In this document: in pieces, positions 16,401-59,136 of the stretch
Layout: each line of letters opens with the position of its first letter
How positions within the stretch are numbered: position 1 is the stretch's first letter
DNA from: Asterias rubens
Lineage: Eukaryota
Assembly (NCBI RefSeq): GCF_902459465.1
Contig: NC_047070.1
Location: forward strand, 20,088,001 to 20,152,000
DNA length: 64,000 nt
Direction of reading: 5' to 3'
The notes under the pieces: generated by a model
The model's input: only the letters and a program-made list of their open reading frames with translations
Told to the model about the DNA's origin: nothing
Database searches by the model: none
Made by a program: the position numbers and the translations under genes

Positions 16401-19400
16401 ATCCTTTTGAGTGAGCAAGTGTGTTTACATTGTCATTACTTGGGTCATTGAACATAATGGATAAGCAGGGGCAGTTAGCAGCACTACTATACTAGTTCAG
16501 GATGGAATTAATAGATTCTGCTTATTGGAAAACTAGAGGCTACGGATGAGGATTCTTCTTATACCAATAATAAACCACGCCCTCAAAGACTATTTGAATC
16601 ACAATAATTAAAACTCCATTCTTTGACAAAGTGTCTGAATTGAATTGTTTCTCTAGGCACAGTATGCAATTGCAGAGGCCCACTATCAATCCCGTCTTCT
16701 GCCGAGGTGTCTTCATAGCTTGAAAGTCTACACCCAAAGACAACAAGGTCAAAGGTCAAATATCATCATGGCCGTCAGCTTCCAAAGGTACTGACACAAA
16801 TCTTCTTTGATTGTTTATAGAAAATACACTTTTGCTTATGCACATTTTTCTATTGATGTAAGCACAGAAATGCAGTCACTCTGGTATCTAAGCTGTCTAC
16901 AATCCCAGCCCCCGTGGCCCCTTAAAGCTTTGCTTCTCATTGTTGCATGGTCTTCTGCGTTCCAATCGACATTAAGCGGTGGACGGGGACTAGAGAGAGA
17001 ATGTTTATTGTCAGAGAAGTGGACAGACGTTGATTTCACCAAACTCTTCCTCAGTTAGGATTAATCTTAGGACTTAGGACGAGTTAAATTCCGTATCCAA
17101 AGGCCCATGACGCATTGAACCCATCCTAAGTTAAGATGGACTCGTCCTTACTCGAGATAGGATTAATCCTAGCCAAAGTATTGGTGGCCCAAGTATCTTA
17201 AAGGGGCCACGGGGCTGGGATTTGTAGAGTGTCATGGCCGAGTGGTTAAGAGCATCAAATTCAAGTTCTGGTGCGTTTTCACCGGAGTGTGGGTTCGAAT
17301 CCCGGTCGTGACACTTGTGTCCTTGAGCAAGATACTTTACTATAATTGCTTCTCTTCACCCAGGGGAATAAATGGGTACCTGCGAGGGTAGAGGTTGATA
17401 TTGTGAATGAAAAAGCCTTTTGAGCGATATAAACTGTTGCCCAGGTTGTATACTCCCAAGGGAGCTGAGAAACATTAAAAAGGGATGTTATTGGCCCTAT
17501 GACCAGGGCACTAATGTAAAGCGCTTAGAGAATTAAGTGTTAGTTATTAGGCGCTATATAAATCGAAAAATTATTGTTATTATTATTATTGTAGCCCAAA
17601 TGTTGGTGGTCTCCTTATTTTGTCAATTATGCTTGTTCAGGGGAGCTGATCAGAAGCACCCAAGCCTTGTACCAACACTGGTCAGCATTATGGTTGGATA
17701 GCTCAGAGGTGGAACACTGGCACATTTATCCGGAGGTCGCACCTACTAATCTTGCTCTAGCCAATGTCTCCTTGTTTAAACCAAAAATGCATAAACTTGG
17801 TTCATCCTTGTTTTTATGGGTTTTTTTTAACAGGGAGTGTGTGCTTGGTTACTTTTTTGTGAGATGGTGTCACGTCTTCCAGATGCATCAAGATGAAACT
17901 ATGATGCAGAGAATGGTAAGTGAGTAGAGAGGAGAAGTTCTTGTGTGCTTTGTCTTGTTAAATGATTCTACATTTTGAGTTTCTGTTGTGATTCACTGGA
18001 ATTGGGCCGGGACAAAGGCATGTAACTAAAAGAGTGCATACTTCTGTTCGTCTATGAAACATTACTAACGGAACAGTATGTATGTATGCAAAGCCCTGAT
18101 CATGGGTTAACATTTTTGTTGGTAAATCTTATGAGCAACAGTTTGAAAACCACTAATGGAGGAGCTTTCTAAATGTTATTTATAAACTGCTCACAAGAAG
18201 TTGGGAAACCTTTTTCAATCAAGTATATTTGTATTATTTATTACTCTCTTTGTATTAAGAGATTGACATGTTGCTGGACTTAGCCACATGAGTGAGAAAG
18301 AGACAGAAGTCACAGAACAAATGTACAAAAATTAGCAATTTTGTGTTAAAGGCAAATGACTGATCTTAATCCACTTTATATTGAGACAAGAAGTTCAGAA
18401 ACAAGTCTTGCAAATACCCAAACAAGGTGTTTTTCATGAGATGGGGGGTAATTGTGTGTAGTGTTCTCACTAGTGCAAATCTTTGTGTAAACCATTCATG
18501 GTTCTGAAGCTTGACCGGTTTGATTATTGATCATTACCTATTGACTGTTTAGTAAAGATAACAGTAATTTTGGCACATTTGATTTGTAACTTTGCCTCAT
18601 TGTCATTCATGTAGCCAATTTCAGCAACATGTCTTTGTTGCAAATGTGGTATCATTTTAAAGAGGAACATGTTATTCTTAATGTTAACAATGATGTTAAT
18701 AAACGTTTCTTATATATTTGAACAGGCTGTCTTGCACTATGAGAACACCATGGGAACAAGGATGCTTCAAACATGGCGTCAACGGACAAGAATCAAACAG
18801 CTGATGGAGGAAAAAGAGGTGATTTGTTTTGCTGATTAATGGAAAAGGAATTGGTCTGGTGCCATTATAAGTAATGAAAACCATTATTCATGTTTGTCAT
18901 TTGTACACATGGAGTGTGATATGATATAGACCTGGGCCTAATTTCATTGCTCTGCTTACCACAAATTTGTGCAAATACGATCACCATTCTCCGTTTACTG
19001 TGCTTACTGAGCAAGCGAAGAAATTGTGCTGAATGCTAAAATTCCCTGCTAGCCTGTGCAATATGCATGATGTAAGCGCAGAATTCCCTGCTAGCCTGTG
19101 CAATATGCATGATGTAAGCGCAGAATTCCCTGCTAGCCTGTGCAATATGCATGATGTAAGCGCAGAATTCCCTGCTAGCCTGTGCAATATGCATGATGTA
19201 AGCGCAGAATTCCCTGCTAGCCTGTGCAATATGCATGATGTAAGCGCAGAATTCCCTGCTTCCGCAAGCGCCGATTCTTTGCTTAAGCATGTTAAGCACA
19301 GTCATGAAATTGGTCCCTGTAAGTTTCTTTGGATTTGTTTAATAAAGACAACAATGCAGAATGTAAAATGGGTTCTCGGAATCTTAGATTGGACTGACAA

Positions 19401-22400
19401 ATTCTTGATTTGATTTTGATTTTGAAGGCGATGGCTATGGAGCATTATGATGGACAACTGTGTATGTTAGCATTGTCACACTGGAAGGAGTTTACTACGG
19501 GGTGCCACACTAGGTGAGTTTATGCTATCATCTGGGAGAACTTTTGTAAGCTTCAAGAATTCATAAAACAAATGTTTGTACACAACCTGTTTTGTCATAT
19601 CTTGCTTTTTACAATGATCCAATGGGAAACAGGTGGCAGCATATATATATTAGAACAATTTTCATTGTTAAGGTAGCTCTAAGAATGCGCAGAAGTGTCA
19701 AAATACTTTAATTTTGACACTCCAAAGTTGGCAACAAGCATGACAAGAGTGGTTGCAGAGCAGTACTTATTGGTAGCCAAGCAGTGTTGTGTTTGAGTGC
19801 TTCTCTTCCAGTGGTTAATGATAATAGGTATGGATACACTGCATGGTAGCCAGGCTGTGCTAAAGATTACTTGTTGTCCTTTCTTTCCATTGTCTCATTG
19901 ATATAGGCGTATTCAGAATCAGCGAGCATTGAGTCACAACTACAATACACGCATTCACAAGATATGGACAGCATGGACAAAGGTATTTATTTAACTCTAT
20001 TGTTTGTTGGATTATGGTTATTTTTGTCTTTCGAATTTTGACCTAACGACTTTGAGTCAGTCTTTAGACGCCCTATTTGGATTATGCAGTTGGACAACAA
20101 GAACTTATTAGTTTACAAGAACTTATTAGTTTACAATCATTTCTGATGTTCAACCATTACTTTTTGTAAGGTTTCAGTTGTGGCCAAGCATTCTAGCGAA
20201 ACTAACTGTCAGGCTTGTTTCAAATGTTGTGCTCAAGCGATGGGGTCTTGCGAGGCTAGCGACTGTTGCACCCATTGGTTGCCGATGCTGCATACTCATA
20301 GTGAGTTGAGATGGTTTTAGAAATGCTTAGGGTCTATTGAAAAGGGCTCATAATATTCTATCGCACTTTAAGAGGCCTAATTCGGCTAAAACTAGTTTAA
20401 ACTGTCTTTGATTGCAGTATGTTTCCCAGTGTCGCAGGAAGGCAGAGAAGACAAAGAAGGCACTCAATCACAGACATAAACACTTGCTTGAGAAAGGTCT
20501 TAGAGCCTTCAAGGTTAGTATATGGATCCTTAGCTGCTTAGCTCATACAGTATTATTTGCTTCAGAAAGGTCTTAGAGCCTTCAAGGTTAGTATATGGAT
20601 CCTTAGCTGCTGAGCTCAAAGACATAAACACTTGCTTCAGAAAGGTCTTAGAGCCTTCAAGGTTAGTATATGGATCCTTAGCTGCTTAGCTCATACAGTT
20701 TTATTTGGTCACCCTGCTTCTATCATTTACATGTAAACAGTGTTAGACCAATGTAGTGTAGGATAATGCCTGAGGTGCGTGTCATTGGTGGCTAGGAATG
20801 GCACGAAGCCATTCGGATTCCAAGAATGGTGAGTACACCAAGGTCATTATGTGACTTAATCTCCATCTGTACTGCCACAAGCACTCCTTTATGTCGCACA
20901 AATGGCATAATATTGTTTAATATGTGGTTTGGTGGTGTTTCTTTTCAATTTCAGATGTATCATCAACATATGCAGAAGATTGAGAGAGAAGTGGCGCTGA
21001 GAAAGCATTGTAAAGACCAAGAAAGACTCAGGTATGTCTTCATTCTGGACGATTTTATTTATTGCTCCATTTTCATGAAGAAGTATGTAAAAAAAGTCTT
21101 GACTGTTTAACTTGTTCCGTTCAACTCGACATAGCTGATACTTGTCCAGACCCCCACCCCCCAAAAAATAATAGTAAACGTGCGGACACAACCTTGCATT
21201 AAATCTCTTATGTAGGAGTGGTTTTGACAATTCGAAATGTATACTCTGCTCGTCTTTTTTTTGCCCTAAAAACGAGCAGAGTAAACTGTTAACACCTCAA
21301 GACCACACCAGCTCTTTTCAGAGCCAACGCTCCAAAAAAAGAGATTCAGTACTTGGTTGTACCCACAAGTTGACTATTTATAAAATTATACTTAAATCTT
21401 ACTTTTCACACCATGCAAAGCTTCAAACACAACTTATGGCAACTATTGTTTCAGATTGGCCTTGACCGAGTGGCAGTGGAATGCATTAGACCAGGCAAGA
21501 CTGAGACATCTTGAAGAGGAAGCTGACTCTTACTTGATGAGGTCTTTAAAGACTAAGGTAAGATTAGGTTTCACTTGATAGATAATAATCCGATATAGCA
21601 ACTATTCTCAGAGTAAACTTAAATGGAGTGTCGTTGCTGAGTGACCATGGTACTTTTGGCTTAATTTGACGCATTACAAAATGCATCATTGTTCTTATTA
21701 GATATCAACCACAGGAAACTGAGTGGGTAAATTAAACAATTTGTTCCTAGTCAGTTTTTTTTGTGGTTTACTATTTGATATCTGAAATAAGTCGGTTGGA
21801 TCGTAAAATTAGTTGTGATCCCTGGCTACACAGCAGTTAATGGGTGTATGGCTTCTGACTATCAACCAGAACAAAGATACAGAGACAAATCGAGAGATTT
21901 GGGCTTATATAGGGCTAAATAGCTGAGTTGGTAGAGCGTCGGCACAATATCCCGAGGTTATTGGTTCAAATCTCACTCTAGTAAAATTTTTGTTTTTTCA
22001 ATCTAAAATTTTGATTATTAATACATTTTTTTTGTAAAGCCTGTGACTGTTTTATGGGTTTTCTGTAGATAGATATCTCTTATGTTGTTGTCACCACTAA
22101 TCTGGGCCAATAGTAATGCTCTGCTTACTGCCTAATTCTGCACATGAGATCACCTTTCTTAGCTGGGCAAGTGCCAAATTTCTGTGTTAGCTGTGCAGGC
22201 GACGAATGCCTTGTAACATGGCCGCGACTTACATGCTTGCCCACAAGCAAAACATCCTTGCTAAGCTGTAAAATACGCTTGATGTAAGCGTGGCTGGTAT
22301 TCCCTGTTTAAGCACAGCTATGTAATTGAGTCCCAATGATTTCAATGACTATTAATCTCATTTTGTTAAACTGCTAAACTGTGAAATACGCTTGATGTAA

Positions 22401-25400: not shown

Positions 25401-28400
25401 AACGTGTAGTGTCATAAATGTATCTGCTTGGAAACAATTACAAACACTATAATTGTTAGAAGAAGTTACATTCACATTTTAAAATAAATTAAAACAGTTT
25501 AACATTTATTGTCCACTTCTGAAAAGAAAGAAATATTGGCATGTAAAACAAGTAAGTTGTGCTGTTTTAAATAGCCAAAAGAGCAAGTTGAGAAGTGGTG
25601 TTTTCTAGCCCGTTGTGTTTTTTACAAGATAATGTATGCCAGGCTATGGTTAAGAGTGAGCCCAACTTTAGAAGCATTACAGATGAAGATCTAACCATTT
25701 GACATTGTGCTTTCTCTTACAGAGTGCATACAAGGTCTTCCATGTTGTTAGACGTTGTGCAACTCACTGGCGTGACTTGACGCAAAGGCATCGACTCCAA
25801 GGCAAAAAACCACCACGCTCACCACAAGGTCCTGAACCCTACCCGTCTCAAACGCTACTCTCAACACACATGTCTGGAGCAGGGGACTCACACGCCCAAG
25901 ACTCTATGACAAAGAAGGCTAGCCTGAAGGACAGAGGTATTAACAAGGTGCCGTTATCTTCAAGCACATTACCCATCATTGCCTTAAGGTCAAACCCACA
26001 GCTCAGGGATGGATTCCAGGCTATTGACAGGTGAGTTTTGTTAATATCAAACAAAGGCCAAGAGAATTATCACTTTTAGCTTGGGTAACTGCTGATGGCT
26101 TTCAATGCGAAAACCCAAATAGTTTTGGAAATCCTGCAAAGGTTGGCCTAGTTGGTAATATCAGAATTTGTTATTGACTCAGCCACAAAGGGCCAAGGTG
26201 TATCTGTCTGATTACTTTGCTGCTTGCTTTTATAGCGACTCTTCGTTAATGACGTTTTGGTCACAATAAAGGGAAGGTCCATTACAGTATTTCCCAAAAA
26301 ACTTTGAAAGCATACATCCTTTTCTCTGAGTGGGTGTGTTTATTGAATTAATTGCTTTAGATGTACGGCGCTACAGAAGTTCTATTTATTATTAGGCTTG
26401 AAGAAGCTTCAACTAAGGTCAGGTTGGTGTAGTGGTGTCTTGCCTCGCCTTCCACCTCTGGGACCCTGGTTCCAATCCCACCAGGGCACTACATGGACCT
26501 CTGGGACCCTGATTCCAATCCCACCAGGGCACTACATGGACCTCTAGGACCCTGGTTCCAATCCCACCAGGGCACTACATGGACCTCTGGGCCCCTGGTT
26601 CCAATCCCACCAGGGCACTACATGGACCTCTGGGACCCTGGTTCCAATCCCACCAGGGCACTACATGGACCTCTGGGACCCTGGTTCCAATCCCACCAGG
26701 GCACTACATGGACCTCTAGGACCCTGGTTCCAATCCCACCAGGGCACTACATGGACCTCTGGGACCCTAGTTCCAATCCCACCAGGGCACTACATGGACC
26801 TCTGGGACCCTGGTTCCAATCCCACCAGGGCACTACATGGACCTCTGGGACCCTGGTTCCAATCCCACCAGGGCACTACATGGACCTCTGGGACCCTGGT
26901 TCCAATCCCACCAGGGCACTACATGGATTGGGTTTTCAGTCCCTGCCTGTATGCATGGGTTTTACGTGGAATAATTCTCTGAGGATTTCCTCCCACATCT
27001 AAAACTGAAATTTCATCATTATCTTCTTTCTTCTAGTTTGGCTCTTATTAGAGCGTTGAGAATATTTATCCAGAACTTCATCAAGTGAGTGATAGGAGTT
27101 ATGCAAAATGAAACACTTATTGATAGAATTATTGTTGATCATTCCAGGGCCAGACTTGAAGGTGAACCCACAGCAAGAATGCGTCCCCAACCAAGACGTC
27201 CTGATTTCCTCATGGAGTCCCTACAGAAAGAAGGACTCTGGTCTCCAGATGCTCATCAACATGGCCCAAGGTACTGTAAACAAAATCTTTAAGATATCAT
27301 CATTAAAGGGAAAGTATACTATTGGTGTTTGGAAACTGTTTGATTGTTTTAATCCTGTATAAATATATATTTAATAAAACTAACCTAAAATTTTACTTAA
27401 AATGTTGGTTGCAATTTGAGATATTTTTGAAACTTTTGAGCAGTTGTGTCTTTAGACCCACGGAGGGGTCTTGTAAACGGAGGATGAATAATCCAAGTTG
27501 GATTACAAAATCTTAAATACATTACTGTCAGTAATGCTTCTCAGATTGATTATTTGGGGATAAAAACTTAAAATATATTTTTCCATCAAAATGTTCAATA
27601 CTATCAAAAGATAGTGTAGGGTTCTTACAAAGTAATCTTTACTTGCTAAGTTTTAAGAGTGATTACAAATAAATACCTACCCTTAAAGAAGAAACACTTG
27701 TGTACACCCACATCTTGCCTCTAAAGTGTCGTGTAAATTCTACCAAAACTCAAAGTTAACACTATTTTGATCTGATGTTTCAGTGGCGGTCCTTATGAAC
27801 CAGAGCAAGAGCTTTTCTTGAAGCAACAGCAAGATATTCCAGGAGTAACCAGGAGTAATAAGAAATATAACAGAGACCTACCTACTCCCGCTGGTCTTCC
27901 AGTTGCACCCAAACCTCAAGTAGCACATCTTCCTGTGTCAACACAACCAAACGGACAAGTCCAGAAAATAACGCCTAAGGAAAGCTTGATCCCTGACCCA
28001 GATGCCTTGCCTAGACTCACAGTACCTCCTCCCCAGCCCTTTGTTCCTAAACACCTTGATGGGTTTGAAAGCCCAGGACTTAGGGTAGCTGGTGATGTGC
28101 AGCTGCAAGTCACAGCAGACTTTGGGGGACAGTCTTCACAGGCGATGGATACAATACATGGCTCTGCAAGTCACAATGATTCATCTGTGGAAGGTCCTGG
28201 AGAAGGCTCATCAACTGACTTGAAGCATCCGTCAAGAGAAGATCTGGGTTTGATGCAGGGAGACGGAGAAACCAAAGGCCTTGAGATGTCTCCCCCACCA
28301 ACACCCCAGAAACATGTTCTCCTCCCACCCTCTGCTTTCATGATACCCAAACCCAACTCAACAATCATTCAAACTTCTCAACTTCATGGAGGAAGCTTAG

Positions 28401-30756
28401 CCATTTCCCCACCATACAATGTCTCACAAACCAAACTGTTACCAGGCAAAGCTAGAGAACAAGACCACAGGTCCCCTCTGTTGCCTAAGAAACAGCAGTC
28501 ACCTTCAACAAACAGGAAGAGGTGGGACCAAGACAGTGAAGTCAAAACTTGTAAGGATGAAAAAGCAGACATTTATAAAGAGGTTCAGGAGATTCATGAG
28601 GAGTTAAAGGGCTACCAAACATCCAAAGAGAAACTCAGGTGAGGCAATGTAAAAAACTACTGCTTCAATAGCCCTCAAAATAACCCGATAAACATCTGAA
28701 GATACTCGGCAATAAAAAGTGTTGACTGTTGTTCAGTAACCGCACTAATACAAAAACGTCTATTTCATTGCAAGAAAATTCATCGTGGTGTAAACTTATT
28801 TTGTTTGTACATCTTGGCAGTTTAGAAAAGACACAATGTTTTAACAATTTGTAATTTGCATGTTATGTACTTGCTGCTTAGGAGTTGTCTACAAGCCACG
28901 GCTTAACTAACAGCCTCATGCTCTCGCTCCTTTATTGCACATAGTTAATTCCTAGTTATTAATTTATTATTTGCTTTTAGTTTATATTGTTTTTCTGTAT
29001 AATTTAATATACTTTAGATTTGTTAAATTTCTATGTACTGTTTAATTCTCACAATTGTTTTTTTTTCAACAAGAGTATGGAATAAACGTTTAGTGAATTG
29101 AATTGAATTGAGTAGTTACACATTGTGGCTCTGACATGGTGGAATAGGAATTTACAAAATCAAAGTTTACAGCACTGAGACAATGGATTGTGATTTGGAA
29201 AGAGGGGTAAATAGCTATTGATCAATATTTTGATAGTCATCATGTATATTCTGATTACTTGTGTGAATTATTTAATAGCAATCTTTTGGTAATTCTTCTG
29301 CACAGGACACTGAAGGATCAGAAGTCCCAGCTGGTAACCTGGTTGACAGAGTACCAACCAGTTCAGAATCAGAACGTAGAGATGAAAGATCCAGTTGTCT
29401 TAGAAGTACAGAAAGAATTAGAACAGGTGAGTTTGTTTTCAAGCTATTCATCTTAAAGCATGTCATGTAAAAAGTGAAATTTTCTTTTCCCATGTTATAT
29501 TCAGTACTTGATATTTTCTCCATCTTTACTTCCCTGAGACATTCATCATTCTTGCCAGGCCATGTGATCCTATGCTATACATCTCTCCAACAATCCAGGG
29601 GCCAGTTCAACAATGTTGCGACCTTCTGGTCACTGGTTCTGGCAAGAATGTATTACAGTGTTGTTCTTTATATCTTGTTTTGGGAGCAGGAGTGGGATCA
29701 GTTCAAAGAGCAACTGTCTGGTCTTGCAGTGCTACAATCCTTGCCAAAATGCTTGGGCCATCCATTGCATTGTTACAACAAACATTCCCTGTCCACTTCC
29801 CCCATGACAATAAACACTCTTTCCCTCTTCCCCTGTCCCCCTGCTCAATGTTGATGGGAGCACTGAAGACAGCGCAAGGAGAGCCAACATTGAAAGGGGG
29901 GCACGGGGGCCCAACAAGATATGACCCGAATTGTAGCTCATATATAATTTTATTATGATGTCCAAGTCCACATTGTATTTTACCTTTGCTTATATTTTGT
30001 ATTGGTGTTTGATGATGTTTCTTTGTAAACTTACATATGCTTTGAGACGTATTATTATATTTTCTTTATTGGTGGTTTTACATTTTGAAACGTGTGTATT
30101 GCGTTGAGACCTATGTTGGTGTTTTTTTCATAGATGGCTTGATATTTTGAGACATATTTAATGTGACCTATTATTGGATTTTATTGATTGGTGTTTTTTA
30201 TGTTGAAATGGTATGTGCATTGAAACCACTGTATTTTTATTCATTGATGGCTCAACATTTTGAAACATATAAATATATATATTTATGCATTGAGACCTAT
30301 TTTTGTATTTTGTTAAGATGGCTTGATATGTTGAAACATTATTATTATTATGAGATGTCAGTTATCTTGTAGGTTATTTAGAATATAATATACCCCTCGC
30401 ATATGAGGTAATTAACTTAATCCCCTTTTCTGTCCTCTGCCTTTAATTACACCCAACTTTTCCTAACTTAGGATTAATCTTAGGCCTAGTTAAGTTCCAT
30501 AACCATATACATAAGGATGCATTGAACCCATCCTAAATTTACAACGAGTTATCCGTAATAACTCAATATAGGATTTATCCTAGCATTTGATTGGTCATGT
30601 TTGTGTTATTCTGAAATAATAATCAATGAATATTTTTGCTTTATATAGATTCAAGATGAGATACATGAGCTGTCCATTAAGTTGAAGGAGAGCAAGCCTG
30701 TGATTGGTCATCTAGTTTCTAGAGTTGCAACACTTATGGTTGAGATTGAAGTTTAG
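10483..30756 (+). CDS. SFI1: SFI1 centrin-binding centriolar protein, about 1404 aa, 28 coding exons
   Basis: Exons: 10483-10703, 11134-11205, 11767-11877, 12251-12345, 12577-12797, 13299-13458, 13688-13849, 14316-14386, 14876-14968, 15358-15455, 16139-16205, 16657-16787, 17834-17915, 18726-18818, 19428-19513, 19907-19982, 20418-20513, 20955-21031, 21455-21557, 22604-22700, 23181-23341, 23781-23855, 24534-24785, 25723-26030, 27148-27270, 27784-28638, 29306-29426, 30649-30756. Total 4215 nt and every phase matches. Colinear similarity to human SFI1: GRLKELRIRHLARKYLHLW, EWKLTIRADYHRR, ALWQWSVVLQRRVLDAWV, VVRRCATHWR, QPRRPDFLMESL, with periodic Trp centrin-binding repeats. The start codon is uncertain because an acceptor at 10466 shows an earlier exon exists. 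Confidence 0.95.
11478..11660. mobile_element. GTACT-rich degenerate element, possibly hAT-derived
   Basis: Dense GTACT(C) motifs between CAGTGTTGT and ACAATACAG (imperfect TIR). No TSD found. Confidence 0.35.
13850..14315 (+). other. U12-type (minor spliceosome) GT-AG intron in SFI1
   Basis: The 5' end GTATCCTTT matches the U12 consensus. Branch-site-like TCCTTAAT is at 14291-14298, under 20 nt from the AG, and there is no polypyrimidine tract. This junction keeps the frame (WRL-Y-IEMKSEM); the nearby ag|gtggag donor would give a stop. Confidence 0.85.
14587..14714 (+). repeat. Tandem duplication, 64 bp x2
   Basis: TCTTGACTATGGGATGAACC...GGGAGAAATTCT occurs twice in direct succession. Confidence 0.9.
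15500..15720 (-). mobile_element. SINE fragment resembling the Nin/Deu-type central domain
   Basis: The reverse complement has CTTCTCTCCA..AAATGGGTAC..GGACTTGCATCCTGTCCAAGGGAAATAGAAATATTCTCAGTC..AAACCGGGTATAAAC, matching the widespread SINE core as I recall it. Confidence 0.55.
17228..17590 (+). mobile_element. Near full-length tRNA-derived SINE
   Basis: A box TGGCCGAGTGG, B box GGTTCGAATCCC, core GTGTCCTTGAGCAAG..CTTCTCTTCACCCAGG..AAATGGGTACC, a LINE-like 3' end AAGCGCTT..GCGCTATATAAAT and a (TTA)n tail. Confidence 0.85.
18935..19316. mobile_element. Harbinger-like MITE with an internal minisatellite; same family at about 22104-22335, 37486-37645, 42852-43037, 45354-45536 and 62602-62790
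   Basis: TIR GGCCTAATTTCAT / ATGAAATTGGTCC with a CTG duplication; the 45354-45536 copy has a CAG duplication. Confidence 0.8.
19041..19260 (+). repeat. 42-bp minisatellite, 5 full copies plus a partial
   Basis: Identical copies of ATTCCCTGCTAGCCTGTGCAATATGCATGATGTAAGCGCAGA; this explains the repetitive ORFs in the track. Confidence 0.95.
20491..20700 (+). repeat. Triplication (73-75 bp period) of an SFI1 exon end plus its splice donor
   Basis: AGAAAGGTCTTAGAGCCTTCAAG|GTTAGTATATGGATCCTTAGCTGC occurs at 20491, 20564 and 20639. Confidence 0.9.
22270..22590 (+). repeat. About 112-bp tandem repeat x3, made of a MITE end plus flank
   Basis: AAATACGCTTGATGTAAG..TTAAGCACAGCTATGTAATTGA..GACTATTAATCTCATTTTGTT occurs three times, ending just before the acceptor at 22603. 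Confidence 0.9.
23409..23577. mobile_element. Palindromic Harbinger-like MITE; a structurally similar element lies at about 44710-44838
   Basis: Ends GGCCCTTTTCG..CCACGGCTT and AAGCCGTGG..AAAAAAGGGCC. The second element has CGACTTTGGCTAC / GTAGCCGAAGTCG arms. Confidence 0.6.
23946..24342 (+). repeat. About 80-bp minisatellite, 5 copies
   Basis: Units CTCCTAGTGGATGATACCCAAGCCTACATCCTTA..GACTATGAAGGGGGTAACCCTGTTTCAGCCC.AGGAGTAGGTGG start at 23946, 24026, 24106, 24185 and 24264. Confidence 0.9.
24947..25040. mobile_element. Palindromic remnant resembling a Penelope-like retroelement terminal repeat; one arm recurs at about 15809-15845
   Basis: Inverted arms GTGGTTGAC..ATCGATCAGTATGCGCTGA / TCAGAGCATACTGATTGAAAC..GTCAACCAC. 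Confidence 0.5.
26417..27040 (+). mobile_element. tRNA-derived SINE whose B-box/T-arm segment is amplified 11 times
   Basis: Head GGTCAGGTTGGTGTAGTGGT (A box), then the array, then a body with TGGGTTTT..TTTCCTCCCACATC resembling the V/Meta-type SINE core. Confidence 0.8.
26455..26927 (+). repeat. 43-bp minisatellite, 11 copies
   Basis: Unit CCTCTGGGACCCTGGTTCCAATCCCACCAGGGCACTACATGGA; 473 bp = 11 x 43. Confidence 0.95.
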
Positions 30757-31050
30757 GCATCGGGATGTGGGTTCGAACCCCTGTCATGATATTTGTGTCA
30801 TGAGCAGGACACTCAACCATAAGCTTCTTGTGTGTAGAGTTGTGACACTTATGATTGAGATTGAAGTTTAGGCATCGGGATGTGGGTTTGAATCCCTGTC
30901 GTGACATTTTGTCTTATTGAGCAGGACACAAGCTTCTCTCCACCCGTTGGTAGAATGGGTACCCATGAGGGCAGAGATGGTTAATGTGAATGCTTGGAGC
31001 ACGGTAACTGGCAGCACCGGCTGTATACTCTCTAGGGAGCTGAGATGGAT
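30720..31050 (+). mobile_element. SINE fragment abutting the SFI1 stop codon, with a 115-bp tandem duplication
   Basis: TAGAGTTG..ACACTTATG.TTGAGATTGAAGTTTAGGCATCGGGATGTGGGTT(C/T)GAA occurs at 30720 and 30835, followed by SINE core CTTCTCTCCACCC..AATGGGTACC. Confidence 0.7.
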
Positions 31051-32620
31051 TGGGGGTTATTAGCTGGCTGTTGTTAATGTACTGAGCCAATAAATACAGT
31101 TAACTATAACAAGGACAAAAAGCATCAGAATTTACAACTTGCTCTGCTGAAATATTTTTTAGAATTGAGCTATAAAATTAACTGCATAACTTACTGTGCT
31201 GAAATTGTACACAAAAATGCTTTGCAAAGGGGCCATTATTCGCGAGTTCTCATAACATGTTAATAAACACACCCACGTGACTTCTTTGAGGTAAATACTC
31301 GTGCAATTAACTTCTGATTCTGTGTCATTTCTAAACAATATTTCATAGTCTGATGCAAAATAAGTTTGTTAACCGACTTATAAAGTGCTATATGTTTTCA
31401 TCTGGTTTAATAAAACAAATCAAAAATGATGGAATTCTTACCAACAAAAATACGTGACTCTGTTCTGTTGATGCTCTTTGCTGGCGTGGGTTGGCTTAAA
31501 ACGTCAACATTAGATTAGATTGGTTTCATAGCCAATGAATGAAGCAATCACAGGAATTTGAAGAAATTGTCTCACATCATAAAAAAAACAAAAACAATTA
31601 TTGGTTCAAACATAATCGCATCCGTCATGCCTTGCCCATTTTTTCGTGATGGGATTTTGTTGACAAGATGGAAATAAGCTGAGCTTGGCTTTCATTATTT
31701 CTTTTACCAGTCCCAATATATCATTTCCATCAAAAGTTTTGATACAATGAGGAACTTTCTTAAATTCATTGACCATTAATTGAATTCGTAATTGAGCGTT
31801 TTACTCATTTTTTTTTTATATAATCGGTGTGATGCAAAATGTATTCTAAATCGGATTTTCACTATTTTCTTTCTCGTGAGCCAGATGGCCGATTGATCTC
31901 AAACTTCTACATGTTTGTCAAGTGATGTATATGGTGGATTACATAAAGTGCTTACACTGCCAGCAACTGTTTTGTTAGCAAAAACAAATTCTATAAGGTC
32001 CCTTAAAAGAGTGATTGTTGTACAATACTGGGGACCAATGGTTAAAAACATACCATGCACGCGGCAGTCACATCACACAACCTGCATGCGCGTGTGACGC
32101 ACTCAAGAAGATTACATCCCCGCGTCACAAAGACGACCGCGCGTTTCAATGACGGAACAATGCTTGCATAAGCGAGCGTTTCCATAGCTTTGTAAAATAG
32201 GGGGGATATGACAGTGTCATGATCCAAAAACAAATCAGCTGAAATTATTAAGTTATAAGTCGTCTGCAGATAGACGGGTGGCTCGGCGTGGTGTTTTTTG
32301 TGTGGTGAATAACTTTTGGAGGCGTTAGTATATTCTTGCCTTTTGGCTCCTTAAGAGAAACGTTAGTAATGGAGAGTCCGTTTACTCTCTTTGTCATTAT
32401 CATCATATTATAAATGATAGAAACGAATTCATTTCTAGGCTTGCATATGCCTAACAAATACTTAAACAAAACGTGAATTTTCATTTTTTTTTACTAAACA
32501 AATTAATCTGCTATTTAGCACATAACTTTAAATGCTACCAAAATGATAACAAAGCCAATACCAAACAATGTTGAATTCCTTCATGGTATTACAGTTGAAT
32601 CGACCCAGTTAACGTAGACC

Positions 32621-35465
32621 ATGGCGTTAAGGGGTCCGAAGAGAAGGGGTTCGCCATCCTCCAAGCGTCCCGGCGTAGTTGCCTCCAAATTACGTGGGGG
32701 CAGATCGAGGTACATAAGGCAAGCTACGATTGGAAAACGAAGAAGCAGTAGGTAAGCCCTACTGATACTTCAAGGAATAAATGATGTGGAGGGGTCATTA
32801 ATTAATATTGGTGTTTCCTTGTAATTGTCAAAGACCTGTCTTCCCATTTGGTGTATCCCAACATAAAATAACAAACCTGTGAAAATTTGAACTCAATTGG
32901 TTTTCGAAGTTACGAGAGAATAATTGACGAAAAAAACACTCTTGTCGCACAAGTTGTGTGCTTTCAGATGTTTGAATTCGAGACCTCGGGTGAGGTCTCG
33001 AATTAGATTAAAATATTTTACTGAGAAATTATCTCTTTCCCCAAAACTTCGTTACTTCAGAGGGAGCCGTTTCTCACAATGTTTTGTATTATCAACAGCT
33101 CCCCATTACTCGTTCCCAAGTAAGGTTTTATGCTAACAATTCATTTGAGTATAATTCATAAATGCAAAATAGAAGCAAATAAACAAATGAAGGGAAAATC
33201 AAAATTTGCCTTTTCTATGTTCTTGCAAATCGATACCAAATATTGACTTTCGTAATCGATAGTGATATTTTACTATCGCTTGACCAGGAACCTTCGTCAT
33301 CGTGAGGTCAAGACTTCCGGATCCGGGGTCAACACTTCTGGGATGTCATTAAGGGTAAAGGGTCAGAAGAAGGTACGTGAGATTCTAATTTAATATCAAA
33401 TCATGATGAAGTGTTAGTAAAGCTGTAAGCAGGTATTTGATTTCTGCTTATTATAAAGACGGCCATTGACACATTGTCCAACCCTGTTGTTTTGCCAAAA
33501 GGCCGGTCGTGGCACTTGTGTGTTCTTTAGCCAGCTATGACTGAATGGAGTATGATGGTACCTCGCCGTTCACATAAACGAACCCGGAACACTTGTCTTT
33601 GAGTAGGATTGTTTCTGGTTCACACGCAAATACAAGCCCTTGTAAGCAGGTTTCCTCTAGCTTGTGATACCAGAGAGTAATAACTATGAGTAATAATTAC
33701 TAATTGAGTAAAGACTAGGCCAAGACGTCATATTTATAGTGTTAACGTCGTTTCTCTGATTTACAGATCGACATCTCCGAGAGAGCTGCTCATCGAAATT
33801 CCATCCGTCGAATAAAAGCCACGACTAGGCTTCCCTGGCGTTCTACCATCACCGCCTCAACCACGCCACGCTCCAAATCACTCCACGCCTCAACCACGCC
33901 ACGCTCCAAATCACTCCACGCCTCCACCACACCAAGTTCAAAGTCACTTCATTGGTACAACCTTCGAAGCTACACTTCACTTCACAAAAGTTCAAATGCC
34001 AGTAGGGTCAGTGTGGGTAATCCTGCCCGGTCTTCACCAAGTTTGAAAACCAAATCAATAAGTAAGAAGCGTACCCGGGTAGGCAAAGGGCGATTTGGAC
34101 CTAGGAATGTTCAACGAAGAGGGCTTCGTGCCGATATTATGAAGGTACGAACTAATCTGCATTGTTTCAATCATTAGTTCTTCAATCATTTTAGGAAGTT
34201 ACTCAAGAGGTACATAGACCCTAAAGAAGACTTGCCGTGTATAAAATTTGATAAATGGACTGCGACATTTTCCATGGACTCCACATACAAACAAAAAATG
34301 ACGAACACAGATTATTTCAAGAGATCACACTTTCATTTGGCTAAGTTTGGACCCCTAGTATGCAAGAGCAAACCTATGTTGGTCTGATTCATGTGAATTT
34401 GCTTAAGGGCAGTTTCCTGGCAGTAATTTTGCTTCTTTCTGTGTCCTTTTTTTATATATTCAGGATCTGATGTCTCGTCTTATACTAGTCCATTCTGCTG
34501 CTACGTCATCACACCTCCTACAGAAAGATAAACCAATTACCGCAAAGCTTCGTCCCCGTGGAGTATTCAACAACCAATCACAATCGATCATGACTGTGGT
34601 TAGAAAACTCAAAAGGTGCTTAGCAGCGACGGCTCGAATCTGCTGCTTTATGTGTCTACGCAACGGTAAAATGAAATGTGCTGAGTTCACAAATTCATGG
34701 CCAGGAGAGCGAGTGCACTGTTTTAGAAGTTGAAATATTTAATGAGAAAAAAACCCCGATATTTTTTAATCCATTTGACTTCATGAGAAGGACTTTAACT
34801 AACGGAATATTTCAGTAAAAGTTTTCTACTGCCAAATATTATTATTTTATCCAAAATAAGAAACGTTACTTGACATTTTGGCTTCATCGTTTGGGGAAAC
34901 CTCCCCAACTAACTATAGTTATTTTGCCATAATTTAATCTTTGCAAAGTAAGCTCTAAAGACCATTAACTTGGTTTGTTCAAAACAATGATGAAAGCTTT
35001 TATAAGGAATGAAAATCAAGTTTGAACGTAAAGTTGTAAGATCGTAATAAGTTCTCGTATTTGGAATGTGATCACTTTGTTACAGTTAAGAAAGTATGGA
35101 TGAATAAACACTCGTCAATAAAACAATAAAATTACCATAACGTGTGTATTTGTCTGCATCAGCTAACTAAGGAGTGTCATTGGTAATCCCGTGCCTTGCA
35201 TAGCAGTAACTGGTCCGGCCGGATAGAAGGAAAGATTACTGGATTTGTTTTTGTTTACCCGTCAAGTTTTGTCCGAGAGATTTCTTCTTGCACGGCGATA
35301 ATAACTATATAGCGCCCTCTGCTGACCTCTCTTTTCATGGCCAAACCTTTAGGTTTATTTCCGATTCAGCCTTAGGTAATTCATTAAGGCGGTCTTCTTT
35401 GATCTTACACGACAGGTGATACCCATGACCAGGAACAGAACAAAATAACACTTTCCATAGACTAG
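32621..35465 (+). CDS. Uncharacterised highly basic Arg/Lys/Ser-rich protein, 281 aa, 5 exons: 32621-32751, 33288-33372, 33767-34144, 34464-34665, 35416-35465
   Basis: ATG in GACCATGG context. Canonical GT-AG sites (gtaagc, gtacgt, gtacga, gtaaaa) with pyrimidine-rich acceptors and consistent phases 2,0,0,1. Total 846 nt with no internal stop, including a 126-codon exon. AATAAA follows near 35780. Exon 5 is the least certain because exon 4 could instead read through to a stop at 34733. Confidence 0.7.
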
Positions 35466-36449
35466 TGAGATCTTCACATATCCAGATCTATAATAACTGG
35501 TTGGTCTTTTGTTCTCCGTGTTGCAGCGGGCTTTGAACTGCCGCGTATTGTTTCACAGCGTAGTGATGAGTTTTGTGCTGTAACACTGCCAGTTTATATC
35601 ATGAGGTGTTATTACATTGCAACGTCACTGGTTGGTCATGATAGCTGCTCACCAAAATGGCGCTCTGTATCGCAATGGTGATGGACACATTCATCCTGTG
35701 GCGTTAATTAATAATGATCGGGCTTTCATTCCCCCCCCCTTTGAAGTAATCCTCTGATGGGAAGGTGTGCATAACGGCGATAAATACATTGAATTATTGT
35801 CCTTTTTGAAATAATGCTGAAATAGGGAAAGGGAAGCGTGCATAACGGCGTTGTTAACAACGAAGTCTCCTTCATAGGCGCTTTACATAAAACTGAAATT
35901 AACCAATAAACAAAAATAAAAAAATGCAAGAAATTCAAATACAGGAGCAGCAAAATATAAAATACTAAAAACAACCAAAATTCTGGACCAACCAATAGAG
36001 GAGACATTGGAAAAGAATTTAACAAGAAAGTGAAAACAGGTCTACATTAATAATAATATTAAACAATCAGTAAACAAATCAATTATTAACAAACTAATTA
36101 ATAATTCATCAATCAATGCATCAGCCAAACTAATCAATCATCTAATGAAGCAAAAAAAAAAAAAAAACACACACAAAAACAAACATTCAATCAACAATTT
36201 AATTAGTGATGAAATGTCATCCAGTACAATAATTAAATCAATCAAAAACCATTTTAAAAAAGGAAGTGATGACAGGACTTCGTAAAGAAATCCTGCACGA
36301 ATTAACTTGCGGACAGTTCAAAACAAATATGCAAACCACAAACCAACTACTGTACAATTATGAATAATCAGGACAATGTTATCTATTCTGATTGGTGGAA
36401 CACGTAGAGCCATGTTTTATGCGATATGAACGAGATGAGAAGTGTATAA

Positions 36450-36775
36450 AGGCACTGGACACTAGTGGTAACTTCTCAAGACATATATTAGCATAGAAAC
36501 TTACTTGGTAACGAGCAATGGAGAGTCGTTGTAAGAAACGATGTTTTTTCAGAAAGAGGTAATTTCTAACTAAAATTTTTGAACCTGAGAAAGACTTCAG
36601 GGCTGTAGCCTTTCTCAATCATCTGAGAGCACAAACATTTTGTGCAATTTATTTCTTGCGACTTCGATGACCACTAGCACTAAGCCCAAATTTTCACAGA
36701 TTTTTTAATGCAAATGTTGGGATACACCAAGTGAGAATACTGGTCTTGGAAATTACCAAAGGTATACCCCTGCCT
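36450..36775. mobile_element. Kolobok-like non-autonomous element (TTAA target); partial copies at about 32821-33155, 39150-39340, 47320-47466 and 54669-54930
   Basis: Termini AGGCACTGGACAC..GGTAA / TTACC..CCCCTGCCT|TTAA. Copies share GAGGGAGCCGTTTCTCACAATGTTTT and the same internal sequence. Confidence 0.8.
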
Positions 36776-39700
36776 TTAAAGTTAGTTTTATTCTCCCATT
36801 ACCAAACGTGGTCAGTGTCTTTAAACATTAACCGTTGCACACCAAGCTATATACGTATAGGCTCTAATTTACGAGTAACGCAATTAATACATACTGGTAA
36901 AATCTATTTAGTATGCACGCGTAGCACAATCATTGAGCGTAACGGAGCCAAGGACGTGACAGGAATTAAGAACTTATAGAAAAGCACTTTACAGTTTTTT
37001 CCAATAATTACTTCGCTTTGGAACAAAAAAGGGAATTATTTATGAGTATAGTGAGGAAAGTGGAGTATAGTGACTAGCCTAATAGTGATTCAGGGTTAAA
37101 CGTTTGTTTTAAACCTTGCAGGGTCTTAGCCAAGTGATAAAGGACCTCTCATTATTTGGCTCATTCCTTTATCGCACGACCACGACCCTGTTTAAGACCT
37201 TGCCCCCCAAAAAAACTCAATCCAATAGAACCTTACATTGTGTTCACAGCTTAAATTCCATTAACCCTAAAACCCAGATTTTACTAAATGAAGTCAAGGT
37301 GGCTTATTGCACGTCAAAGTCAAGAGATTAATTAAACACAAAACGTTTTACCAAAGAGCTAAAATGAGGGAGGCCAACGAAGAGGAAGCCATTTATTGTT
37401 CGCGGAGCAAATGGTCAGTATGTCTTTTTTTTGCGCGCTATTTTTCCTAATTAGGGGCGACTTTCTCATTTGTTGCTACGCTGTGGGCCCAATTTCATAG
37501 CTACTGATGCCAAAAATAGAGCCCGGCAAAAATGAACAGGATGCCAGTCACAAATAATCCATGTGACCGTAGTTTGGCTGGTATAAAACTTGCTCTGTCA
37601 AGCATTCTTTTGTGCGTTGGGCAGCTCTACAAAATTGGGTCAATTAAGGCTTGTGCAGGAATAAGATCTATTTGTGACAGAAGTAAATTCACGTCCATTT
37701 TGCATGCAATAAATGTTATAAACCGAACTTAATTCACATCATTGTAGATTTTGTTTTGGTTTTTAATTGACAACGTTTTGATTTTTGTTCTAGTTTCACT
37801 AAAAATTTTGTTCTCCCTAATGGATTGTGACAGCAATTATGATGGAAGCCATTGTCAGATTGTTTGATATACATGTTTGCTTAAACGTTTATATAAACTG
37901 ACAATCGTAATGATTGAATGAACGTAGATCGAACCGCCCACACTGTATTGTCACTGGTGGCATCCTGGTGACACATAATAATAACCACTGTTTACAGAGC
38001 CCCCTCCGGTAATGACAATTATGCCGTGCTGAAAGTCTTCAAATAACAATTCCAACAACCCAGCAGCAGCGAAAAAAAAAAAAAAAAAACGCACTCGATA
38101 ATAATTTTTATTTCCACTGCTCTCAAAACATCAATTTTATAACTCGCGAGATATTTGATTGGAACGTTTCCAACCATGATCATCTTTATACCATAAAGTT
38201 CATGTTAAAATTTGTGAACATTAAACCAAAGTTGTGCACACTCTAATGAGATGGTTTCCATGTACAATGTTTCTCGCGAATGGAAAACAAAACCACTCCC
38301 TTTTTGTATACCGAGACTCAACTTTCCAATAAAAAATTATGCGCGAGACTTCCTTGAAACGCAGCAGTTTGGATACAATATTATCAAGGCAACGATAGAT
38401 GTCTCGCGTGTATTCAGATTGGTGAGCTTCTTTAAGCTTCTTTGAGACAAATGGCCTGAACACAATTACCTTGATCATTTCTAGCTCCAGACCAGGGAAA
38501 ACGTTTGGGATTGAATTATTATAATGTATTGTCCAAACCACACCTGCCTATCCATGTCCTTTCCCCCCAGGAAGTTATGCATCCCCTCTAAAAACAAAGT
38601 GGTGTCCCATATCGTCGTTGCAAATTAGATCCCTACTTAAATCACTGGTTCCCCGAGTCTTACTCCAGGATATTCGGTCGTCAGTTACTTCGATTATCCA
38701 ACTATAGATAATGCTCCCTTTAGGTCTTTTATTTCCCAGGCCTGTAGTTGCCTACGCATTTAATTAGTGTAACTGTGTGTTCCTCGTGGTCAAACTTCTA
38801 ATTTGGCTTGAGGGCGTGCTTTGTATCCCGAAAACGGAAACCACGAAAACGCAACTTTTACTTTGAAGAGACTGTTCATTAATATAAAGTTGTTAATGGA
38901 TGCCAAAGGCTTTGTTTGTGGTTGCCTAAAGACATCAATGATTTACTGTAGTGTTAATAGTAATAATAATGTAATGTCAATGCTAGAGTGAAGTGGTCAT
39001 CATTTCACGTCATCCCGCACGCAGGATTCTGAGCATTTCGGGTAGTAAGTACAATCTTTCTTTTAAGTCATTAATAATGCTTCAAGTAAACGGCTCCCAC
39101 TGAAGTTACACAGTTTTAGAGAAAGAGGTAACATATCACTCAAATTTCAAAAGACTTTAGGTCTAAGCCTTTTTTTTAAGGCAACTGAATGCACACAAAT
39201 TTTGCGTCCTTTTTCGTTCATTATTCTCTTGCAACTCTGATGACCAATTGAGTCCATATTTTCACAGATGTTTTAATACATATGTTGAGATTCACCAAGT
39301 GAGAATACTGGTCATTGACAATTACCAAAGGTGTCCAGTGAACTTTTTATACACGCGAAGAAACACTCCTAGTGCTATCTCCCAACACTCTCAACAACCA
39401 ATCTTGTGGAGTGTGGAGAGTTCTCATTTATATGTGAGACTTTTCACGTGTATTTGCAACACATTCTAACTCGTACAATATGTACACGATGATACCATCC
39501 ACACCTTTCGTTATAGGTGACTCTCATATCAAAACTGCACGGCAAATATTTGACAGCCCCCGGTCAGTGGGCACTTCACCGATAATAAGCTTCATGAATT
39601 GATTAGAATGAAAATTACTGGCAATGACCGCCTATCGTGTCTTCCTTTGAACAAACATGAATACTGGTCAATTATATTAAGGTAAATTAGCGACTGGGGA

Positions 39701-58728: not shown

Positions 58729-59136
58729 CTGAAAAGAGAAATGGTAGAAACACAGTTTAGTTTATGTCAATCTTAATTGCAATCTTCTTCCATGGCAGAC
58801 ACTCTTAAGGAGGCCCACACCAAACTGCCAAAGAGAAGATTTAAGAAATGCCTGAAAGTATAAGAACGTGAATTGTGCTGGATGTGTAAAGTATAAGAAC
58901 GTGAATTGTGCTGGATGTGTAAGCTATCATAGGGCAGTTTCCTTTTGTACTCAGAAGTCAAACGGTTGCCCCAAAAGCAATCCAACTCACTTCTAAGAAT
59001 ATTTAAACAAACCTTGCCATTCTTAACTAGATCTTGATTCACGTAGACAAACTAAGTGCACCTATCGGAAGGAGAAATATTGAAGCGTCTCGAGCGTCGG
59101 ATATGAGCGCCTTATAAAAAAAACACTCATTTAAAA

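What the first reader, a model, noticed from the sequence alone, without database searches (positions are those of the whole stretch)
32621..35465. Hidden 5-exon gene for an unrecognised, extremely basic protein: candidate sperm nuclear basic or protamine-like protein
Seen: five exons with canonical sites and matching phases give MALRGPKRRGSPSSKRPGVVASKLRGGRSRYIRQATIGKRRSSR-NLRHREVKTSG..KGQKK-IDISERAAHRNSIRRIKATTRLPWRSTITASTTPRSKSLHASTTPRSKSLHASTTPSSKSLH..KSISKKRTRVGKGRFGPRNVQRRGLRADIMK-DLMSRL..KLKRCLAATARICCFMCLRN-GDTHDQEQNKITLSID. My manual count is about 51 K/R against 4 D/E in the first 198 aa. It has an 11-aa repeat (33 nt x3), several SP/TP motifs and a Cys-rich C-terminal patch. Only exon 4 appears in the ORF track. 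Established: invertebrate sperm nuclear basic proteins and echinoderm sperm histones use R/K/S-rich tails with SP-basic motifs and evolve fast. Inference: a lineage-restricted nucleic-acid-condensing protein, possibly Cys-crosslinked or membrane-anchored.
Basis: partly seen in the sequence, partly recalled or inferred. Interest (0 to 1): 0.8.

Follow-up and report, generated by a model that had tools for sequence, protein, structure and literature searches.

The report
Annotated fast-evolving basic starfish orphan gene
This is a real, spliced gene of the common starfish for a very basic, floppy protein found so far only in the genus Asterias, but public annotation already lists it, it has four exons rather than five, and nothing yet links it to sperm.

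Summary
RNA-type contigs from two studies join 32751>33288, 33372>33767 and 34144>34464. Exon 5 is not supported. The same contigs run straight through the proposed donor at 34665/34666 to a poly(A) signal near 35103-35118, so the ORF ends at the stop at 34731-34733. The resulting 287-aa protein is letter-for-letter RefSeq XP_033632978.1, "uncharacterized protein LOC117294601", of Asterias rubens. The gene is therefore neither hidden nor unrecognised.

The only homolog found is the syntenic A. amurensis ortholog (275 aa, 84-88% identical). Between the two species the CDS diverges as fast as the introns (7.0% each) and dN/dS is about 0.55. The 864-nt frame still has only two indels, both in frame, where 5.5-7 frameshifts are expected. 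Net charge is kept (+59 versus +61), and the last 90 coding bases carry one synonymous change.

There is no Pfam, PDB or Atlas relative, and AlphaFold gives pLDDT 40. K+R is only 23%, and there is no H1 or histone domain, no SPKK motif and no membrane segment.

Verdict: a genus-restricted, disordered, polycationic protein-coding gene, probably nuclear and nucleic-acid-binding. The sperm-chromatin role is untested and unlikely a priori.

The parts
32536..32620 (+). 5' leader as seen in RNA contigs, with a possible transcription start near 32536. It holds three upstream ATGs (32543, 32568, 32584). The main ATG lies in an ACCATGG context.
   Evidence: the spliced 417-nt contig starts at 32536 in X1 and X8, and depth steps up there (9.5>20.7 and 31.7>43.4); this stretch is 2.6% diverged from A. 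amurensis against 10.5% further upstream. The start site itself is inferred, not shown.
32621..32751 (+). Exon 1 coding part (codons 1-43 plus 2 nt), donor TAG|GTAAGC.
   Evidence: It forms part of XP_033632978.1.
32752..33287 (+). Intron 1. It carries a very high-copy interspersed repeat at about 32860-33260.
   Evidence: word depth 1e5-1e6 and many repeat joints; inverted partner at 36714-36768.
33288..33372 (+). Exon 2 (85 nt).
   Evidence: the 417-nt contig has exactly 85 letters between its exon 1 and exon 3 pieces. Depth in bin 33264-33460 equals contig depth x 85/197 in both X1 and X8.
33767..34144 (+). Exon 3 (126 codons), Ser/Thr/Arg/Lys-rich.
33853..33948 (+). In-frame 33-nt tandem repeat (STTPRSKSLHA x 3), polymorphic in copy number.
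   Evidence: another A. rubens individual, L001, has two copies. A. amurensis has two copies.
34464..34733 (+). Coding part of terminal exon 4 (89 codons plus the stop at 34731-34733). It includes the conserved Cys/His tail CFMCLRNGKMKCAEFTNSWPGERVHCFRS.
   Evidence: (junction 34144>34464 and read-through of the 34665 donor), and (one synonymous change in the last 90 nt against A. amurensis).
34734..35118 (+). 3' UTR. AATAAA signals lie at 35103-35108 and 35117-35122, and the RNA contig ends at 35118.
   Evidence: the signal is conserved in A. amurensis.
35416..35465 (+). It is not part of the transcript seen. It lies in a moderately conserved non-coding block (35142-35463).
   Evidence: no cover in X1 and no joint 34665>35416; 1-nt deletion at 35441 in L001; the whole block, not just the 'exon', is 2.2% diverged.

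Best explanation
The locus is the already annotated Asterias rubens gene LOC117294601.

Shown: it is a four-exon transcription unit, spliced and polyadenylated near 35118. Its 287-aa ORF (32 kDa, pI about 12, net charge +59) is kept open in the sister species A. amurensis.

Inferred from evolution: selection keeps the frame, the charge and the C-terminal Cys/His tail, but hardly constrains individual residues in the N-terminal two thirds. This is the pattern expected for an intrinsically disordered polycation whose activity depends on composition rather than fold.

Inferred from composition only: the protein most likely acts in the nucleus or nucleolus by binding nucleic acid or other polyanions through its Arg/Lys/Ser-rich disordered region. 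That region carries basophilic-kinase-type RRxS sites. The short conserved C-x2-C-x7-C-x12-HC tail, preceded by a weakly predicted helix, may serve as an interaction, metal-binding or disulfide module.

It is a taxonomically restricted ('orphan') gene known so far only from the genus Asterias.
For: Gene model and annotation:
- Junctions and 3' end come from RNA-type contigs of two studies whose introns have zero depth.
- The model is identical to XP_033632978.1.

Ortholog and coding constraint:
- The ortholog P0010 in A. amurensis is syntenic.
- The ORF far exceeds shuffled controls.
- The 864-nt CDS has only two indels, of 33 and 3 nt. From flanking non-coding DNA, 5.5-7.1 frameshifting indels are expected, giving P(0) of 0.0008-0.004.
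- There are 34 amino-acid changes against 40.3 +/- 3.3 expected from random substitutions (p = 0.04), and no stop codons (p = 0.11).
- dN/dS is 0.55. Net charge is +59 versus +61.
- The last 90 coding nt carry one synonymous change where about 6 changes are expected.

Protein character and expression:
- AlphaFold pLDDT is 40 and the ESM model 0.43.
- The nearest language-model neighbours are viral and sperm DNA-condensing polycations, but at chance-level scores of 0.44-0.58.
- Exon 4 is held by transcriptome-sized A. rubens runs from at least five studies.
Against: - Substitutions show almost no codon-position bias (18/17/23), and the CDS diverges as fast as the introns (7.0% each). Evidence for purifying selection on residues is therefore weak.
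- The leader seen in the contigs has three upstream ATGs.
- Colinear RNA contigs run from the upstream gene's 3' UTR (below 30900) up to exon 1. Some transcripts may be read-through and not translatable.
- There is no protein-level evidence such as proteomics or Ribo-seq.
- The function is inferred from composition alone.
- No homolog was found outside the genus, but other starfish genomes could not be searched at the DNA level.
Confidence: 0.7

Rival explanations
1. The ORF is transcribed but not functional as a protein. On this reading it is a young, possibly de novo ORF on a spliced RNA, partly produced by read-through from the upstream 1493-aa gene, and two closely related species simply have not had time to break it.
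For: - CDS divergence equals intron divergence (7.0%).
- Codon-position counts are 18/17/23, and dN/dS in the first 72 codons is 0.93.
- There are no homologs beyond the genus and no predicted fold.
- The leader has upstream ATGs, and RNA cover is continuous from 30900 to 32565.
- Basic, disordered products are typical of translated random sequence (general knowledge).
Against: - No frameshifting indel occurs where 5.5-7.1 are expected (P 0.0008-0.004).
- The only two indels are multiples of 3.
- The ORF is 287 codons against a shuffle maximum of 207.
- The C-terminal 90 nt are nearly invariant.
- Charge is conserved, and the ACCATGG start context is conserved.
Confidence: 0.2
2. One reading: a sperm nuclear basic or protamine-like protein that condenses sperm DNA, possibly Cys-crosslinked.
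For: - Strong net positive charge, Ser-rich with [ST]P motifs, fast evolution, a copy-number-variable repeat and C-terminal cysteines. These traits are shared with many reproductive chromatin proteins.
- Its mass of 32 kDa lies within the 6-40 kDa range quoted for PL proteins (PMC11607694).
- Protamine P1 and adenovirus core proteins appear among the weak Atlas neighbours.
Against: - K+R is only 23% and Arg 14%. The high pI comes from a lack of acidic residues, not from protamine-like density.
- There is no H1 winged-helix, histone-fold or protamine Pfam match, and no [ST]P[KR][KR] motif.
- Echinoderms, starfish included, are described as H type, with sperm-specific histones and no PL or P proteins (PMC11607694, PMC10858212).
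- The mRNA is present in transcriptome-like runs from at least five studies, which does not look like a narrowly testis-limited transcript. Tissues are unknown, however.
Confidence: 0.05
3. The reader's 5-exon form exists as a minor alternative isoform (donor 34665, acceptor 35416) in tissues not sampled here.
For: Both splice sites and the 50-nt 'exon' are identical in A. amurensis. The sites are canonical and the phase fits.
Against: - No joint 34665>35416 appears in any of four runs, and X1 has zero depth there.
- Conservation covers a 320-nt block, mostly 'intron' under that model.
- The donor lies in a coding stretch that is conserved anyway.
- A natural A. rubens allele has a 1-nt deletion in the 'exon'.
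- RefSeq lists no such isoform in the protein's cluster.
Confidence: 0.08

Closest known systems
RefSeq XP_033632978.1, uncharacterized protein LOC117294601 (Asterias rubens), and its A. amurensis ortholog (GCA_032118995.1, 275 aa)
   Same: The A. rubens entry is identical over all 287 residues to the 4-exon model in the window. The A. amurensis protein is syntenic, has the same exon structure and is 84-88% identical.
   Different: Nothing differs: this is the same gene.
Protamine-like (PL) sperm nuclear basic proteins of invertebrates
   Same: Basic, Ser-rich, largely disordered and fast-evolving, with a mass inside the 6-40 kDa range (PMC11607694).
   Different: No H1-type winged-helix domain. 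K+R is 23%, well below typical PL values (own knowledge: about 35-50%). Sperm expression is unknown, and the host clade is classed as H type.
Echinoderm sperm-specific histones (Sp H1, Sp H2B) with SPKK tails
   Same: The same phylum, with basic Ser/Pro-containing repeats.
   Different: No histone fold or linker-histone domain. The motif here is [ST]Pxx-K (TPRSK, SPSSK), not SP[KR][KR].
Taxonomically restricted (orphan or de novo-like) genes encoding basic disordered proteins
   Same: No homolog outside one genus, no predicted fold, near-neutral amino-acid evolution with a maintained ORF, and an internal variable repeat.
   Different: It has three introns, a long ORF and a conserved C-terminal Cys/His tail. 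Its origin (de novo or diverged beyond recognition) was not tested.

Membership tests
RefSeq gene LOC117294601 / XP_033632978.1 | Identical protein sequence and genomic position in A. rubens chromosome LR699100.1 | tested here: met
   P0002 equals the 4-exon translation; the gene spans 2113 nt, which equals window 32621-34733.
Protamine (P type) | Small (3-10 kDa) and highly arginine-rich (PMC11607694); Pfam Protamine_P1 | tested here: not met
   32 kDa and Arg 14.3%. No Pfam match.
Protamine-like (PL type) | Descent from histone H1 (winged-helix globular domain or H1-like tail) | tested here: not met
   Pfam scan up to E = 10 gives no Linker_histone match. PDB phmmer finds nothing.
Protamine-like (PL type) | Very high Lys+Arg content | tested here: not met
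   K+R is 23.3% overall and 25.8% in the first 198 aa. The threshold of about 35-50% is from my own knowledge.
Any SNBP | Made in spermatids and present in sperm nuclei | not testable with these tools
   Run identities and tissues are coded, and the single read-laying run was used on the junctions.
Echinoderm sperm histones (SpH1/SpH2B) | Histone or linker-histone domain plus SP[KR][KR] repeats | tested here: not met
   No histone Pfam match. Zero [ST]P[KR][KR] motifs.
Protein-coding gene (as opposed to lncRNA) | ORF kept open across species beyond the neutral expectation | tested here: met
   0 frameshifts against 5.5-7.1 expected (P 0.0008-0.004), no stops, dN/dS 0.55. This rests on only one species pair.
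Protein-coding gene (as opposed to lncRNA) | Protein product detected | not testable with these tools
   No paper mentions the accession. No proteomic resource was available.
Taxonomically restricted gene | No detectable homolog outside a narrow clade | tested here: inconclusive
   Only A. amurensis was found among 5.8 billion protein clusters. The exon 3 HMMER scan of 1.84 billion representatives gave only low-complexity hits. JGI metagenomes gave none. Unannotated starfish genomes could not be searched.
Membrane-anchored protein | Hydrophobic segment of about 19+ residues or a signal peptide | tested here: not met
   The maximum Kyte-Doolittle 19-residue mean is 0.87, in CLAATARICCFMCLRNGKM. 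The N-terminus is polybasic.

The most novel reading that the evidence does not exclude
The protein is a genus-specific spermatid or sperm chromatin protein (transition-protein-like or PL-like). It would have arisen recently in a clade thought to package sperm DNA with histones only, and would be evolving under reproductive conflict. On this reading the deeply divergent exon 1 alleles would be a signature of that selection.
Probability: 0.06. Interest if true: 0.6.

Novelty: already known. Interest (0 to 1): 0.22.

Why it matters
As it stands this is a routine result.

What remains of interest is modest. It is a clean example of a genus-restricted, disordered polycation. Its frame, charge and short Cys/His tail are maintained while most residues drift at the neutral rate. 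It also has an in-frame variable repeat and two strongly divergent exon 1 alleles.

If testis-specific expression were shown, it would challenge the view that asteroid sperm chromatin is purely histone-based. No evidence obtained here points that way.

Tried and rejected
- Exon 3 and exon 4 peptides against the 5.8-billion-cluster protein set. Only the window's own 87-aa ORF was found, which led to the RefSeq entry.
- HMMER scan of 1.84 billion representatives with exon 3. Only unrelated low-complexity repeat proteins came back. The gene's own cluster is probably represented by the 87-aa fragment, so this scan was blind to orthologs.
- Pfam, PDB sequences and the ESM Atlas, on the whole protein and the C-terminal part. 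Only chance-level neighbours appeared.
- AlphaFold2 on the two-sequence alignment gave pLDDT 40, so no fold search was attempted.
- JGI metagenome scan with the alignment found nothing.
- Look-up of the partial product expected from the RNA contigs found nothing on record.
- Rfam on 30000-38000 found nothing, and there is no tRNA in the duplicated element at 30711-30909.
- No paralog exists in the window.
- A literature search for the accession or locus name found nothing.
- Tissue of expression could not be obtained. Run ids are coded, library fields are empty, and only one read-laying run was allowed.

Full report
**Anatomy.** Exons 1-4 have canonical sites: TAG|GTAAGC, AAG|GTACGT and AAG|GTACGA donors, and polypyrimidine-AG acceptors. 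Their phases are compatible. The 33-nt tandem repeat lies at 33853-33948 (2.9 copies, 90% matches).

**RNA evidence.** The earlier notes of this scan say the genome is a sea star.
- Runs X1 and X8 belong to the same species label but to different studies. They behave as RNA, with zero depth in introns 2 and 3 and, in X1, beyond 35234.
- In both runs a 417-nt contig covers 32536-32749, then 85 further letters, then 33765-33882.
- Those 85 letters equal the length of exon 2. The depth in the exon 2 bin equals contig depth x 85/197 in both runs.
- A second contig (905 nt in X1, 850 nt in X8) joins 33895-34142 to 34462 and continues unbroken to 35118 (X1) or 35063 (X8).
- The boundary offsets are the same 2-nt ambiguities that my own blastn of the model mRNA shows.

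Three junctions are therefore supported. The fourth is not: the transcript reads through the proposed donor at 34665/34666 and ends about 10 nt after AATAAA (35103-35108). The ORF then continues to the stop at 34731-34733, giving 287 aa.

**Identity.** The exon 4 ORF retrieved an 87-aa protein whose 90% cluster contains XP_033632978.1, "uncharacterized protein LOC117294601 [Asterias rubens]". That protein is identical to the 4-exon translation. Its gene occupies 2113 nt on chromosome LR699100.1 of GCA_902459465.3, which matches 32621-34733. The gene is therefore annotated already, with four coding exons.

**Relatives.** A full-length search found one protein, an "uncharacterized protein" of Asterias amurensis. 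It is 275 aa long, 84% identical by BLASTP and 88% over aligned columns. Its locus (L003) is syntenic, lying downstream of the orthologous ~1500-aa gene. Nothing else was found by any of these routes:
- the exon-piece searches;
- the HMMER scan of representatives, which gave only low-complexity hits;
- Pfam;
- PDB sequences;
- the ESM Atlas, where scores of 0.44-0.58 are at chance level;
- JGI metagenomes.

Other starfish genomes could not be searched at the DNA level. "Genus-restricted" therefore means "as far as these tools can see".

**Is it coding?** The ORF of 287 codons compares with 14 and 16 in the other sense frames of the 1334-nt mature RNA. None of 5000 dinucleotide shuffles reaches it (maximum 207). 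A global alignment of 31400-36500 with the A. amurensis locus shows the following:

| Region | Result |
|---|---|
| CDS | 58 substitutions in 828 aligned nt (7.0%) |
| Introns | 7.0% diverged |
| 3' UTR | 5.5% diverged |
| Upstream | 10.5% diverged |

- Substitutions fall 18/17/23 on the three codon positions.
- By the Nei-Gojobori method, dN is 0.062 and dS 0.113, so dN/dS is 0.55. By part it is 0.93 for codons 1-72, 0.33 for exon 3 and 0.58 for exon 4.
- Amino-acid change is thus close to neutral: 34 changes observed against 40.3 +/- 3.3 simulated (p = 0.04).
- The frame, in contrast, is protected. The CDS has two indels, of 33 and 3 nt.
- Non-coding DNA of the same locus has 0.9-1.1 indel events per 100 nt, about three quarters of them not multiples of 3. 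That predicts 5.5-7.1 frameshifts, so P(0) is 0.004-0.0008.
- No stop arose (p = 0.11), and net charge is +59 against +61.
- The last 90 coding nt, which encode CFMCLRNGKMKCAEFTNSWPGERVHCFRS, carry one synonymous change where about six changes are expected.

I conclude that selection maintains the ORF, its charge and its C-terminal tail, but not most individual residues.

**Caveats on translation.**
- Colinear RNA contigs also cover 30900-32565 at comparable depth. This stretch is the 3' UTR of the upstream 1493-aa gene, whose stop is near 30755, plus the intergenic DNA.
- A unitig break and a step up in depth at 32536 in both runs suggest an own start site. This is inferred, not shown.
- A leader starting at 32536 holds three upstream ATGs, although the main ATG sits in a conserved ACCATGG context.

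**Protein properties.**
- Mass is 32 kDa and pI about 12. The composition is R 14.3%, K 9.1%, S 15%, with only 8 D+E.
- AlphaFold2 gives mean pLDDT 40, with three low-confidence helices at 77-91, 194-212 and 238-264. The ESM model gives pLDDT 0.43.
- There is no hydrophobic segment: the maximum 19-residue hydropathy is 0.87.
- Five [ST]P motifs are present, all followed by K at +4. None fits SP[KR][KR] or [ST]Px[KR].
- Two RRxS sites and one K[KR]x[KR] site are present.
- The Cys/His residues conserved between the two species are C250, C259, C262, C270, H283 and C284.

**The sperm hypothesis.**
- Echinoderms are described as H-type, with sperm-specific histones rather than PL or P proteins. 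PL proteins are 6-40 kDa and related to H1, and protamines are 3-10 kDa and highly Arg-rich (PMC11607694). Starfish are listed as H type in PMC10858212.
- This protein has no H1 or histone domain.
- Its K+R content of 23% is far from protamine-like density. Its extreme pI reflects missing acidic residues.
- Exon 4 is held by transcriptome-sized A. rubens runs from at least five studies and is absent from two others. Tissues are not disclosed, so testis specificity cannot be judged.
- I rate the hypothesis at about 5%.

- The 50 nt and both splice sites are identical in A. amurensis. However, they sit in a 320-nt block (35142-35463) that is conserved as a whole, at 2.2% against about 5.5% further downstream.
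- No RNA joint uses the proposed sites.
- An A. rubens individual recovered from a marine metagenome (L001) has a 1-nt deletion at 35441.
- A rare alternative isoform cannot be excluded, but it is unsupported.

**Within-species variation.**
- L001 differs from the window by loss of one 33-nt repeat unit, by S151N and by two synonymous changes.
- A second fragment, P0003, carries R256L.
- The contig of run X4 (organism label C) differs from the window at 9 positions within 32641-32731. Eight of these are non-synonymous, and seven are shared with A. amurensis.
- The rest of the locus in that run differs at about 0.3%. This clustered allelic divergence in exon 1 is unexplained.

**Verdict.** The gene is a known but uncharacterised, Asterias-restricted, fast-evolving gene for a disordered polycation. 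A nuclear, nucleic-acid-binding role is the most likely mechanism by composition. A sperm-chromatin role is untested and improbable.

Noticed in passing
window 32641-32731 (exon 1): Run X4 (organism label C) carries a second exon 1 allele with 9 differences in 91 nt. Eight are non-synonymous and seven are shared with A. amurensis, while the rest of the locus in that run differs by only about 0.3%. This could reflect balancing or positive selection, gene conversion, introgression or a paralog in that sample.
   Followed up: partly
window 33853-33948: The in-frame 33-nt repeat is copy-number polymorphic. The window has three units; another A. rubens individual (L001) and A. amurensis have two.
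   Followed up: yes
window 35142-35463: This non-coding block downstream of the poly(A) site is 2.2% diverged from A. amurensis, against about 5.5% further downstream. It is not covered in the A. rubens RNA runs, and a 33-nt insertion in A. amurensis abuts it at 35464. It may be a regulatory element. There is no Rfam match.
   Followed up: partly
window 32860-33260 and 36416-36800: A very high-copy interspersed repeat lies in intron 1 (summed contig depth 1e5-1e6), with an inverted partial copy downstream (arms 32810-32864 and 36714-36768). It causes many false 'opposite strand' joints.
   Followed up: no
window 30650-30909: The last coding exon of the upstream 1493-aa gene ends near 30755. 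An 84-nt segment spanning its stop (30711-30794) is duplicated at 30826-30909 (88% identical). It contains a tRNA-like GGTTCGAACCC box, but ARAGORN finds no tRNA. It may be SINE-derived.
   Followed up: partly
window 30900-32565: RNA contigs cover this intergenic or 3' UTR stretch continuously, at depths similar to the gene itself. This suggests a very long 3' UTR or read-through from the upstream gene into LOC117294601.
   Followed up: partly
window 57695-58753 (-): An intronless 352-aa ORF is a rhodopsin-family GPCR (Pfam 7tm_1, E = 6e-39).
   Followed up: partly
window 19033-19413 and 26493-27002 (+): These long ORFs consist of tandem peptide repeats (FPASLCNMHDVSAE x 5, and a ~43-aa unit x 4). 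They are probably minisatellites rather than genes.
   Followed up: no
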